Made by a program: the position numbers and the translations under genes. From contig OZ025710.1 of assembly GCA_964019335.1 (NCBI GenBank), forward strand, positions 248,001-312,000: 64,000 nt of DNA, in the 5' to 3' direction. Every line of letters begins with the position of its first letter. Within the stretch, counting starts at the first letter, position 1. The notes beneath the pieces are model-generated. The model ran no database searches. It was not told where the DNA came from and saw nothing but the letters and a program-made list of their open reading frames with translations. This document shows positions 10,778 through 12,619 of this stretch, in pieces. The stretch comes from Diplonema japonicum (Eukaryota > Protista > Euglenozoa: Diplonemea).

Positions 10778-11087
10778 TCAGCACCTAGTACTGACAGGAG
10801 GTGGTAGAGGCGGGTTCATGGCATATGGCTGATGAACCGCTTCACTTGGTTTGTGCTGGACAGGGTGAACCGCTTGCTGCTGCTGATGATTTTGCTGGGG
10901 AACCCCAAGTTGCTGCGGCGAAAACGGAATAAACGAGTGGGGCTGGAAGGACTGCCCACCGTAAGGCTGCCCGTTTCCACCATAGTTGACATAGCACTGC
11001 GGGTACTGCACCGACGCAGCATTGGGAAGAATACTGTTGGCCACCTGAGCAAACGCCAGCGCAGCGGTCACATGAGTCATATCTGGT

Positions 11088-11122
<35 letters not shown>

Positions 11123-12619
11123 CGACTGCACCGCAGCTACCGGTGCAGGCCCCTCAGGCTTCGGAACAAAGCTGTGGCAGATGTGAATATTGTTGCAGTT
11201 TTCCCCATATTCGCATCTATTCTCCCTGTGCAACCTGCATATCTTCCCGTTCGCAAAACACTTATACTGCCCGGTTTTCCCCGTCCTCACAGGGAGACTG
11301 TTCAAACCCGTTGTGCTTGTGATCAACATATGCGGTACCTCAGAGAAGCAGCCTCCTTGTGTCGGCCCCCACCTCACCTTAACAGGGATCTCAACAGGAG
11401 GATGCGTAGCCCTCTCAGGGTGGTGCAACGGGCAGCAAGGGTTCCCGTACCTCAGCTTTGCGATGTAAGGCGGGTCGGCGTGGATGGAACGGCAGCTTTT
11501 CCCATGTTTACACTTCCCCTCAAGGTAGTAAAGGCAAAGTTGCGGCGGTTGTGCGGAAGGTGCGCCTCTTGCCTTTGCGTACAACGACCTCCCCATCGTA
11601 GCCTCTGTTCTGTGGTAGGGAAGCACGTACTTCGAACCGGTAGAGGGATCTACTACATCACGCAGCTCAACGACGAAGTTGGTACCTGTTGACACTGTGT
11701 ACCCTGCACCAGAGGCGGCCATCTCACGGAGGACCTTGATCGCCTCGCGAGAGACGTGCAGCTGGTTGCAAGCATGGTGTGCGTTGCAACCCCTGTGCCC
11801 GTTCTCCCCACCCTTTTGGTACAGCATGCACACAAAGGACTGCTTCTTCGTGGCGTAGTCGCGCTTTCCAACAGAGTCCTCCAACAGGATAGGGGGCACA
11901 ATGTACCTTCCTTTGTTCTGTGGGTCATAGATCAAGCATGATGTGGTGGAATGGAGCAGGGTGTTGCCCACGGTGATGCGGGTTTCTCCACTAACACACT
12001 GCGACTTGACCTGCCTGTGGAGGTAGCCAACTTGAAGCCCGCACACAGAGTGCCATTTGATAAAAGCTTGATCTTTTGTGGGAACAGCTTGGTTTGACGG
12101 GACAGGGACCGTGTTCAACATTGTTGGTGGGCCGTTGTCTTCGATATCTTGGTCATGTCCGGGGTCTGACCCGCTTTCTTCGTCGTGGTTTGATGAAGGC
12201 TTGTCCTGTGTGACTGGAGGACAGCATGCAGCAACTTCTACCTCGTTTAAGTACTGCGCGTACAGTTCATCGACCTTTTGAAGGTATGTTACCGAGAGCT
12301 TACCGCCGGTCTCCTTGTCGAACTTCTTCAGGATCTTTCTGCAGCCTTCTCTGTTCATCCCGTAGAATTTAAGCCGAGCTTGCTTCTCGGGGATTTTGCA
12401 GGGGCAGCCTGGCTGGCATTGATCCTGCTGGTCCTCTTCGAGGTTCGCCTTCAGGAAATGCTCCAGCTTCACCATCTCCCCTTCAAACAATGACGCGAAG
12501 GCCGTGGGATCGTTGTAGATAGACTCCTTCAGCTTCTCGTAGTTGAGGTACTTCTCCGTGTCTATCATGCCGCTGTAGGTCTCAGCGTGTTCGCTGAGCG
12601 AGTTGCCAAACTTCACCAT
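10778..12619 (-). CDS. SPX domain + three CCCH zinc-finger RNA-binding protein with Q/P-rich tail and HQPY motif
   Basis: SPX: MVKFG...YLNYEKLK...FEGEMVKLEHFL...YGMNREGCRKILKKFDK. CCCH fingers: CMLY...C...CNQLH, CLYYLEGKCKHGKSCRSIH, CRLHRENRCEYGENCNNIH. Poly-Q tract; HQPY at 10823-10834. Confidence 0.85.

What the first reader, a model, noticed from the sequence alone, without database searches (positions are those of the whole stretch)
10778..12619. SPX-CCCH fusion: candidate phosphate/inositol-pyrophosphate-sensing mRNA regulator
Seen: a compact N-terminal SPX domain that keeps the Y..Y.KLK and KILKKFDK basic clusters, three CCCH fingers, a Q/P-rich tail and a C-terminal HQPY. Established: SPX domains bind inositol pyrophosphates, signal phosphate status, and are usually joined to transporters, VTC, RING or ankyrin modules. 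In trypanosomes, H(N/D/E/Q)PY-type motifs in CCCH proteins recruit MKT1-PBP1 to stabilise mRNA. Inference: in a polycistronic genome without gene-specific promoters, this protein could be a post-transcriptional PHO-type regulator. I do not know of a characterised SPX-CCCH architecture.
Basis: partly seen in the sequence, partly recalled or inferred. Interest (0 to 1): 0.88.

Follow-up and report, generated by a model that had tools for sequence, protein, structure and literature searches.

The report
Phosphate-sensor domain fused to RNA-binding zinc fingers
A marine protist (most likely Diplonema japonicum) has one gene that joins an SPX domain, the kind that senses phosphate status, to three RNA-type zinc fingers and a tail motif that trypanosomes use to recruit an mRNA-stabilising complex. 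It is a real, conserved and apparently undescribed domain combination that could link phosphate status directly to mRNA control.

Summary
Window 10778-12619 (-) is one uninterrupted 613-aa ORF.

- **SPX domain (res 1-132).** It is compact. The model has pLDDT 86, and the eight best structural matches among 48,161 PDB representatives are all SPX domains (Z 12.1-8.5). All six canonical ligand-binding residues are invariant: Y27, K31, K99 and K95, K98, K102.
- **Linker (res 133-184).** It is predicted to be disordered.
- **CCCH module.** It holds three invariant fingers.
- **Tail.** It is Q/P-rich, with a Q12 run and HQPY 14 residues before the C-terminus.

The finger module belongs to a large euglenozoan family. 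Its SPX-less trypanosomatid members all carry VWRHNPY, the canonical MKT1-binding motif, near the C-terminus.

The genome also encodes two MKT1 homologues, PBP1-like LsmAD proteins, IPK-family kinases and a PPIP5K. No paper in the searched library describes an SPX-CCCH protein.

It remains an inference: ligand binding, RNA binding and MKT1 binding are untested.

I class it as a new variant of known kinds, of moderately high interest.

The parts
10778..12619 (-). Complete single-exon ORF of 613 aa (stop codon at 10778-10780) encoding the SPX-CCCH protein
   Evidence: It aligns end to end with complete transcript ORFs of D. ambulator (P0001), Lacrimia (P0004) and Hemistasia (P0005).
12224..12619 (-). 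Compact SPX domain, res 1-132, six helices. Phosphate-binding cluster (PBC) Y27/K31/K99; lysine surface cluster (KSC) K95/K98/K102. A conserved Cys (C68) sits in the alpha3-alpha4 loop.
   Evidence: Pfam SPX in 6 of 6 orthologues. AF2 model pLDDT 86.3, pTM 0.80. About the top 28 Foldseek hits are SPX, prob 0.99-1.0. The top 8 VIA-align hits are SPX, Z 12.1-8.5, rmsd 2.5-3.0 A over 102-127 residues. Invariant columns. PBC/KSC definitions from PMC9911596 and bioRxiv 2019.12.13.875393.
12068..12223 (-). Acidic, Ser/Pro-rich linker predicted to be disordered, res 133-184. Its length varies between orthologues (about 50 aa here, much longer in P0003).
   Evidence: pLDDT about 25. The alignment is gappy and unconserved here.
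11750..12067 (-). Beta-rich subdomain plus the first 'DPxNK..P..G' unit and finger 1, res 185-290. Finger 1 is C264-H288 at window 11756-11830, spacing Cx13Cx5Cx3H.
   Evidence: Strands at 187-241 in the model, pLDDT 70-83. Invariant C264, C278, C284, H288. Paralogues have Cx7-8 spacing at this finger.
11480..11536 (-). CCCH finger 2, res 362-380, spacing Cx7Cx5Cx3H
   Evidence: Pfam zf-CCCH 24.6 bits, above the 20.5 cut-off. Invariant in A1 and A3.
11423..11437 (-). Invariant CC-x2-H motif (C395, C396, H399) between fingers 2 and 3. It may be an extra metal site.
   Evidence: C395 and C396 are invariant and H399 nearly so across the 16-sequence family alignment; all three are invariant in the six orthologues. 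A metal-binding role is inference only.
11177..11239 (-). CCCH finger 3 plus a trailing invariant Cys, res 461-481, spacing Cx7Cx5Cx3H-x-C
   Evidence: Invariant in A1 and A3.
10781..11152 (-). Q/P-rich low-complexity tail, res 490-613, with a Q12 run at res 500-511 (window 11087-11122)
   Evidence: pLDDT about 25-30.
10802..10834 (-). Short C-terminal linear motif HQPYAMNPPLP, res 596-606; the HQPY core is at window 10823-10834. Candidate MKT1-docking motif.
   Evidence: Motif found in Q, P0001, P0002 and P0004. Chance estimate. Published consensus H(E/D/N/Q)PY. Trypanosomatid homologues of the module carry VWRHNPY at the equivalent C-terminal place.

Best explanation
This is a genuine single-gene protein specific to diplonemids. 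A compact SPX receptor domain for PP-InsP or phosphate is fused, through a flexible linker, to a three-finger CCCH module of a euglenozoan RNA-binding family, followed by a poly-Q/HQPY effector tail.

The most likely mechanism has three steps:
1. The CCCH module binds a set of mRNAs.
2. The HQPY tail (with poly-Q) recruits the MKT1-PBP1 complex, which stabilises or activates bound mRNAs as in trypanosomes.
3. Ligand occupancy of the SPX basic surface, which reports cellular phosphate status, switches RNA binding or effector recruitment on or off. The switch could work within the molecule or through a partner.

This would give a post-transcriptional phosphate response of the kind the PHO pathway provides in yeast, in an organism that transcribes genes polycistronically.

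Shown here: the ORF, the domain identities, the conservation of ligand-site and zinc ligands, the conserved tail motif, the phylogenetic distribution, and the presence of the partner and ligand-synthesis genes.

Inferred: ligand binding, RNA binding, MKT1 recruitment, the direction of regulation, and the link to phosphate.
For: - **ORF and orthologues.** One uninterrupted ORF. Full-length orthologues come from three independent diplonemid transcriptomes marked complete, and from two genome contigs.
- **SPX domain.** All six orthologues hit Pfam SPX, best 3.7e-10. The domain model has pLDDT 86 and pTM 0.80. The best structural matches are the CtVtc4 SPX-InsP6 complex, the Vtc4/Vtc3/Vtc1 complex, XPR1 SPX, fungal XPR1, OsSPX1, PHO1;H1 and Gde1 SPX, which fill the top 8 of 48,161 chains. 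The Y27/K31/K99 and K95/K98/K102 pattern equals ScVtc4 Y22/K26/K133 and K129/K132/K136.
- **Nearest outside SPX domains.** They belong to SPX-PHO4 phosphate transporters.
- **Fingers.** Pfam zf-CCCH is above its cut-off, and the zinc ligands are invariant across 16 family members.
- **Module homologues.** They exist in trypanosomatids (E about 1e-43 to 1e-49), and the roughly 300-360 aa group among them (27 proteins) all carry (V/I)W(R/Q)HNPY near the C-terminus.
- **Motif.** The published MKT1 motif is H(E/D/N/Q)PY, and PUF9 is listed with HQPY plus poly-Q as a confirmed interactor.
- **Partner and ligand genes in this genome.** Two MKT1 genes, LsmAD/PBP1-like genes, IPK kinases and a PPIP5K.
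- **Gene setting.** The gene sits in a same-strand gene array. Polycistronic, post-transcriptionally regulated expression is documented for Diplonema (PMC10161547).
Against: - No experiment of any kind supports it.
- The window protein alone is below Pfam's SPX gathering score (22.9 against 27.8).
- HQPY lacks the W/Y-R prefix of the trypanosome motif. Two orthologues have HSPY, outside the published consensus, and two (P0003, P0005) have no H.PY.
- The CCCH module as a whole matches no curated family, and its fold was not searched on its own (only re-found SPX).
- Expression in this species is unverified.
- An Artemidia orthologue transcript (P0008) lacks the SPX part. It may be a truncated model, or the SPX domain may be dispensable.
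Confidence: 0.5

Rival explanations
1. The SPX domain does sense the ligand and the fingers do bind RNA, but the output is not mRNA stabilisation through MKT1. The protein might instead repress or degrade its targets, control translation, or act in the nucleus on 3'-end processing or trans-splicing. The C-terminal H(Q/S)PY...PPLP motif would then dock a different partner.
For: HSPY in P0002 and P0004 lies outside the published H(E/D/N/Q)PY consensus, and P0003 and P0005 have no motif. The diplonemid motif has its own conserved flank (PY-A/L-x-x-PP-L/I) and lacks the W-R prefix of the trypanosome motif. In fission yeast, inositol pyrophosphates act on RNA 3' processing and termination (abstract of PMC12077094).
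Against: HQPY plus poly-Q is the combination listed for T. brucei PUF9, a confirmed MKT1 interactor. The homologous trypanosomatid module family carries the canonical HNPY at the same place. MKT1 and PBP1-like genes are present.
Confidence: 0.24
2. The SPX domain is a structural relic, for example a helical dimerisation or scaffold domain, and no longer senses anything. The protein would then be one more constitutive member of the expanded diplonemid CCCH RNA-binding family.
For: The domain is unusually short (about 130 aa) and scores below the Pfam cut-off in this protein. An Artemidia orthologue model lacks it. At least 14 SPX-less paralogues exist in the same genome.
Against: All six ligand-contacting residues are invariant in 11 sequences down to about 33% identity, including SPX-PHO4 transporters. 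That pattern is hard to explain without selection on the ligand surface. The fold matches ligand-bound SPX structures best.
Confidence: 0.12
3. The CCCH module does not bind mRNA. It might bind protein, DNA or a polyanion such as polyphosphate or poly-ADP-ribose, so the fusion would regulate something other than transcripts.
For: Only one of the three fingers passes a Pfam cut-off. The module has extra beta-rich parts and a CC-x2-H site with no curated family. No structural match was obtained for it.
Against: The spacing Cx7-8Cx5Cx3H, and homology to kinetoplastid C3H1 proteins that carry the MKT1 motif, point to mRNA-binding regulators. In trypanosomes that motif is found on RNA-binding proteins.
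Confidence: 0.08
4. Artefact: a chimeric ORF created by misassembly, or two adjacent genes read as one.
For: No RNA evidence from this species could be obtained.
Against: There is one open frame without stops. The same collinear architecture is found in three independently assembled transcriptomes and two other genome assemblies. DNA runs from two studies labelled as one organism hold 81-92% of the sampled words of the stretch, although some of these may be the data the window was assembled from.
Confidence: 0.02

Closest known systems
Plant stand-alone SPX proteins (AtSPX1, OsSPX1/2) that inhibit PHR MYB-CC transcription factors when PP-InsP is bound
   Same: An SPX receptor with the same PBC/KSC surface controls a nucleic-acid-binding regulator of phosphate-responsive gene expression. 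OsSPX1 and OsSPX2 are the best sequence hits in the PDB, and OsSPX1 is among the top structural hits.
   Different: In plants the SPX protein and the regulator are separate polypeptides, and the regulator binds DNA. Here the SPX domain is covalently fused to CCCH fingers of the RNA-binding type, in an organism with little control of transcription initiation.
Trypanosome CCCH and PUF regulators that recruit MKT1-PBP1 through H(E/D/N/Q)PY (ZC3H11, ZC3H20/21, PUF9; Singh et al. 2014, PMC3985637)
   Same: CCCH fingers combined with a C-terminal HxPY motif and poly-Q. PUF9 is listed with the identical HQPY plus (Q)n. MKT1 and PBP1-like genes are present in this genome.
   Different: None of those proteins has an SPX or any other small-molecule sensor domain ('SPX' does not occur in the Tritryp CCCH catalogue). 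The diplonemid motif lacks the W/Y-R prefix and is HSPY in two orthologues.
Trypanosomatid two-finger C3H1 proteins of about 300-360 aa with invariant VWRHNPY (for example T. cruzi TcG_05958, T. theileri TM35_000241150, L. panamensis LPMP_283100; annotated hypothetical)
   Same: They share the homologous 'DP..K..P..T.G - CCCH - CCxxH - T.GL - CCCH-x-C' module (E 1e-43 to 1e-49 against the family profile) and a C-terminal HxPY.
   Different: They have two fingers, not three, and no beta-rich subdomain and no SPX. In the tree they fall in the other main branch of the family. I could not resolve their T. brucei ZC3H number.
SPX-PHO4 (PiT-type) phosphate transporters from uncultured marine eukaryotes (P0157, P0032)
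   Same: These are the closest SPX domains outside the family (33-35% identity). They are the same compact type, with the conserved loop Cys and an identical K..KK..K helix.
   Different: The output there is a membrane transporter, not zinc fingers. This genome has no such gene.
SPX-RING E3 ligases (plant NLA)
   Same: Known case of an SPX domain fused to a soluble zinc-binding effector domain (my own knowledge, not tested here).
   Different: A RING domain is a ubiquitin-ligase module. No RING signature is present here, and the fingers are CCCH.

Membership tests
SPX domain (Pfam PF03105) | Match to the family HMM above the curated cut-off (27.8 bits) | tested here: inconclusive
   The window protein scores 22.9 bits, over res 85-116 only. 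All six orthologues match, best E 3.7e-10, and the precomputed Pfam column lists SPX for all five database orthologues. The nearest outside relatives pass the cut-off at 33-46 bits.
SPX domain (Pfam PF03105) | N-terminal helical hairpin plus helical-bundle fold | tested here: met
   Model pLDDT 86.3, pTM 0.80. The top 8 VIA-align hits of 48,161 chains are SPX structures, Z 12.1-8.5, rmsd 2.5-3.0 A, 102-127 of 137 residues aligned. Foldseek ranks about 28 SPX chains first. Caveat: helical bundles can reach Z of about 13 by chance, but here every top hit is SPX, at 21-25% identity for most of them.
SPX domain (Pfam PF03105) | Phosphate-binding cluster (Tyr, Lys, Lys) and lysine surface cluster (three Lys) with spacing Y-x3-K and K-x2-KK-x2-K | tested here: met
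   Y27, K31, K99 and K95, K98, K102 are invariant in 11 sequences. The spacing is identical to ScVtc4 Y22/K26/K133 and K129/K132/K136, and to AtSPX1 Y25/K29/K139 and K136/K140/K143.
SPX domain (Pfam PF03105) | Binds InsP6 or PP-InsP | not testable with these tools
   This needs ITC or a similar assay on recombinant res 1-135. The ligand pathway is encoded in the genome: IPK kinases and a PPIP5K.
CCCH (C3H1) zinc finger, Pfam PF00642 | C-x7/8-C-x5-C-x3-H spacing and an HMM match above the cut-off | tested here: met
   Finger 2 scores 24.6 bits against a 20.5 cut-off. Fingers 2 and 3 have Cx7Cx5Cx3H. Finger 1 is Cx13Cx5Cx3H here but Cx7-8 in paralogues.
CCCH (C3H1) zinc finger, Pfam PF00642 | Binds single-stranded RNA | not testable with these tools
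   Inferred only from the family type and from homology to kinetoplastid C3H1 proteins.
MKT1-recruiting RNA-binding proteins of Kinetoplastea (H(E/D/N/Q)PY class) | Presence of H(E/D/N/Q)PY | tested here: met
   HQPY at res 596-599. Consensus from PMC3985637.
MKT1-recruiting RNA-binding proteins of Kinetoplastea (H(E/D/N/Q)PY class) | Motif conserved among orthologues | tested here: inconclusive
   HQPY in 2 orthologues, HSPY in 2 (outside the consensus), absent in 2. Probability in a shuffled tail is 1.1%.
MKT1-recruiting RNA-binding proteins of Kinetoplastea (H(E/D/N/Q)PY class) | MKT1 and PBP1 partners encoded in the same genome | tested here: met
   MKT1_N and MKT1_C in one 852-aa frame on C86, and a second locus on C8. 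LsmAD-domain genes are present.
MKT1-recruiting RNA-binding proteins of Kinetoplastea (H(E/D/N/Q)PY class) | Physical, PY-dependent interaction with MKT1 and activation in a tethering assay | not testable with these tools
   Experiment needed.

The most novel reading that the evidence does not exclude
This would be the first SPX receptor wired directly to an RNA-binding output. One polypeptide would read inositol-pyrophosphate or phosphate status and set the stability or translation of a phosphate regulon through MKT1-PBP1. That would replace the transcriptional PHO/PHR logic in a eukaryote that lacks gene-specific promoters. It would also show that the HxPY-MKT1 axis predates the split between diplonemids and kinetoplastids.
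Probability: 0.35. Interest if true: 0.85.

Novelty: new variant of a known kind. Interest (0 to 1): 0.68.

Why it matters
SPX domains are the general eukaryotic receptors for phosphate status. Their known outputs are transporters, the VTC polyphosphate polymerase, a CDK inhibitor, a ubiquitin ligase and, in trans, PHR transcription factors. An output through an RNA-binding protein has not been described.

Euglenozoa (trypanosomes, Leishmania, diplonemids) regulate genes almost entirely after transcription. How nutrient signals reach their RNA-binding proteins is largely unknown. The D. papillatum genome paper explicitly calls for the postulated RNA-binding regulators to be identified.

This protein gives a concrete, testable link from sensor to RNA regulator. 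Diplonemids are among the most abundant heterotrophic protists of the often phosphate-poor ocean. The finding also suggests that the HxPY motif of this CCCH family is older than the kinetoplastids.

Tried and rejected
There is therefore no read-level evidence for the transcript, its SL site or its ends.
- **The look-up of sequencing runs** listed no run on record as RNA.
- **A word-seeded search with the SPX part alone** returned only family members.
- **hhalign of the family N-terminus against this genome's own SPX-EXS protein** was weak: probability 42% over 25 columns. That paralogue is itself divergent, so I did not count this against the SPX assignment.
- **Searching the full-length model** re-found only SPX.
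- **The T. brucei ZC3H name of the VWRHNPY homologues** could not be established. A search for the motif string found no paper, no supplements are held for PMC3985637, and the paper I opened concerns the unrelated ZC3H12.
- **Rejected: a trypanosome origin.** The orthologues are diplonemid, and a paralogue in this genome is 100% identical to a D. japonicum transcript protein.
- **Rejected: a fusion artefact** (see the rival explanations).
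Full report
**Observation.** One search lists an ORF at exactly 10778..12619 on the minus strand, 613 aa, starting MVKFG.
- Y24-x-x-Y27-x-K-L-K31 and R94-KILKKFDK-102.
- Three CCCH fingers: C264-x13-C278-x5-C284-x3-H288, C362-x7-C370-x5-C376-x3-H380 and C461-x7-C469-x5-C475-x3-H479.
- A Q/P-rich tail (res 490-613) with a Q12 run.
- HQPY at res 596-599, 14 residues before the C-terminus.

The gene lies in a run of same-strand ORFs.

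**Organism.** The five database relatives that cover the whole protein are diplonemid: Diplonema ambulator (68-73% identity), Lacrimia lanifica, Hemistasia phaeocysticola, and two unnamed ENA genome contigs. A paralogue on contig C96 of this genome encodes a 319-aa protein that is 100% identical to a Diplonema japonicum transcriptome protein. The window is therefore most likely from D. japonicum. So this is a diplonemid, not a trypanosome. For Diplonema, unidirectional gene arrays, universal SL trans-splicing and mainly post-transcriptional regulation are documented (PMC10161547).

**Is the N-terminus an SPX domain?**
- *Sequence.* The window protein alone scores 22.9 bits, below Pfam's 27.8-bit cut-off, and only over the last helix pair. 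All six orthologues hit SPX, the best at 3.7e-10. The best PDB sequence matches are rice SPX2 and SPX1.
- *Structure.* With an 11-sequence alignment, res 1-137 fold confidently (pLDDT 86.3, pTM 0.80, six helices). Foldseek ranks about 28 SPX chains first, with probability 0.99-1.0 and query TM 0.5-0.67. An independent all-against-representatives search puts eight SPX structures at ranks 1-8 of 48,161 chains: CtVtc4-InsP6, the VTC complex, XPR1, ScVtc4, fungal XPR1, OsSPX1, PHO1;H1 and CtGde1-InsP6. These have Z 12.1-8.5, rmsd 2.5-3.0 A and 16-25% identity. Unrelated helical proteins follow from Z 8.5 downward.
- *Ligand surface.* SPX ligand residues are defined as ScVtc4 Y22/K26/K133 (PBC) and K129/K132/K136 (KSC), and AtSPX1 Y25/K29/K139 and K136/K140/K143. 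The same spacing here gives Y27/K31/K99 and K95/K98/K102. All six are invariant in 11 sequences that go down to about 33% identity.
- *Nearest outside relatives.* These compact SPX domains belong to SPX-PHO4 phosphate transporters from environmental eukaryotes.

I conclude that this is a bona fide, unusually short SPX domain with an intact ligand surface. The genome encodes IPK-family kinases and a PPIP5K, so the ligands can be made.

**The zinc-finger module.** A profile of the six orthologues was searched against 1.84 billion representative proteins. It gave 599 hits, 277 of them at E <= 1e-10.
- Only the diplonemid orthologues match over both the SPX part and the fingers.
- Among the best 150 listed, the others match either the finger module alone or, in four short proteins, the SPX part alone.
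- The shared core is a 'DP-x-K-x3-P...T-x-G' unit, then a CCCH finger, then CC-x2-H, then a 'T-x-G-L' unit, then CCCH-x-C. Thirteen columns are invariant, ten of them Cys or His.
- The window protein and its closest SPX-less paralogues have an extra N-terminal beta-rich part and an extra unit plus finger.
- This genome holds at least 14 paralogues.
- No Pfam family other than the generic CCCH models matches the module.
- A profile search that returns names shows homologues in trypanosomatids (Trypanosoma, Leishmania, Leptomonas, Angomonas and others) and a Tbor-labelled transcriptome protein (possibly Trypanoplasma borreli). All named ones are annotated hypothetical or C3H1-type.
- A quick maximum-likelihood tree of the module places the SPX-bearing proteins, plus one Artemidia protein without SPX, together with an SPX-less sister group in one diplonemid clade (SH-aLRT 94). 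That sister group includes the C96 paralogue. The kinetoplastid proteins fall on the other main branch.

The fusion is therefore probably a diplonemid invention that predates the split between Diplonemidae and Hemistasiidae.

**The tail motif.**
- The published MKT1-interaction consensus in T. brucei is H(E/D/N/Q)PY, with the MEME form (Y/W/T)(R/T/Q)H(N/D)PY. Poly-Q is a second motif enriched among interactors, and PUF9 is listed with 'HQPY, (Q)n' as a manually confirmed interactor.
- The window protein has exactly Q12 plus HQPY.
- The motif, with its flank, recurs in four of six orthologues: HQPYAMNPPL twice, HSPYATNPPL and HSPYLTHPPI. Two orthologues have none.
- In shuffled tails, H[NDEQ]PY appears in 1.1% of trials.
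- All 27 proteins of the roughly 300-360-aa trypanosomatid-type group (10 unnamed) carry (V/I)W(R/Q)HNPY some 15 residues before the C-terminus. Environmental members carry W-x-H(D/E)PY.

A C-terminal HxPY thus looks like an old feature of this family. The genome encodes two MKT1 homologues (MKT1_N and MKT1_C domains) and LsmAD/PBP1-like proteins.

**Mechanism.** The best-supported reading is a modular switch: a sensor (SPX), a flexible linker, an RNA-binding module (three CCCH fingers) and an effector tail (poly-Q/HQPY leading to MKT1-PBP1). How the SPX state is transmitted is unknown. It could be intramolecular masking or a ligand-dependent partner, as in SPX-PHR. The direction of regulation is also unknown. 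The domain identities and their conservation are shown. All activities are inferred.

**Known or new?**
- Full-text searches for SPX together with CCCH, kinetoplastids or diplonemids found no description of such a protein.
- The Tritryp CCCH catalogue does not mention SPX.
- The protein atlas returned only euglenozoan C3H1 clusters.
- My searches exclude homologues of this family outside diplonemids. They do not exclude independent SPX plus CCCH fusions elsewhere.

I class it as a new variant (a new architecture) built from known kinds of parts.

**Limits.**
Transcript structure in this species is therefore unverified, and nothing from those places was sent to a search tool afterwards.
- One-transcript evidence comes only from complete ORFs in three related transcriptomes.

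Noticed in passing
window 12852-13251: A 400-bp palindromic element lies 233 bp upstream of the gene's start codon. Its arms are 192 nt and 98% complementary, with a 16-nt loop, and it is flanked by long C and G runs. This genome holds at least 40 dispersed copies at about 92-99% identity, so it looks like a recently active MITE-like repeat.
   Followed up: partly
window 13260-13462: A second inverted repeat sits next to the first. It has 30-nt arms and an interior made of GGAAAC/GTTTCC repeats, again bracketed by homopolymer C/G runs.
   Followed up: no
window 12398-12415 (res 69-74) and C68: A Cys in the SPX alpha3-alpha4 loop is invariant (C68, within C-x3-C-x-C here). It is shared with the SPX-PHO4 transporter SPX domains and is not a feature of classical SPX domains that I know of. 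Its function is unknown.
   Followed up: no
P0167-P0193 (trypanosomatid and unnamed proteins, e.g. T. cruzi TcG_05958, L. panamensis LPMP_283100): An uncharacterised trypanosomatid two-finger C3H1 family of about 300-360 aa has a nearly invariant C-terminus, (V/I)W(R/Q)HNPY...SSV(I/V/L)ET. It is probably an MKT1 client. I could not establish its T. brucei ZC3H number.
   Followed up: partly
G000 C25:645282-645734 and C25:661459-661911 (L020, L019): Two identical 326-aa two-finger paralogues lie 16 kb apart on one contig, which indicates a recent segmental duplication within the CCCH family.
   Followed up: no
window 16247-18191 and 26333-28289: The same set of ORF sizes (275, 251, 394-398 and 295 aa) recurs about 10 kb apart. 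This suggests a duplicated segment, probably tied to the triplicated gene array that another note of this scan describes for 18996-26060.
   Followed up: no
G000 C79:261910-262434 (L001) and C9:487882-488145 (L003): Two of the genome's other SPX genes are interrupted by stops or frame changes between the N-terminal MKF... exon and the K-rich helix, which is consistent with introns. The SPX-CCCH gene has no intron.
   Followed up: no
P0008 (Artemidia motanka, 411 aa): In the tree this protein groups with the SPX-bearing Hemistasia orthologue, but it starts at the beta-rich subdomain and has no SPX. It is either a truncated transcript model or a natural SPX-less isoform or loss.
   Followed up: partly
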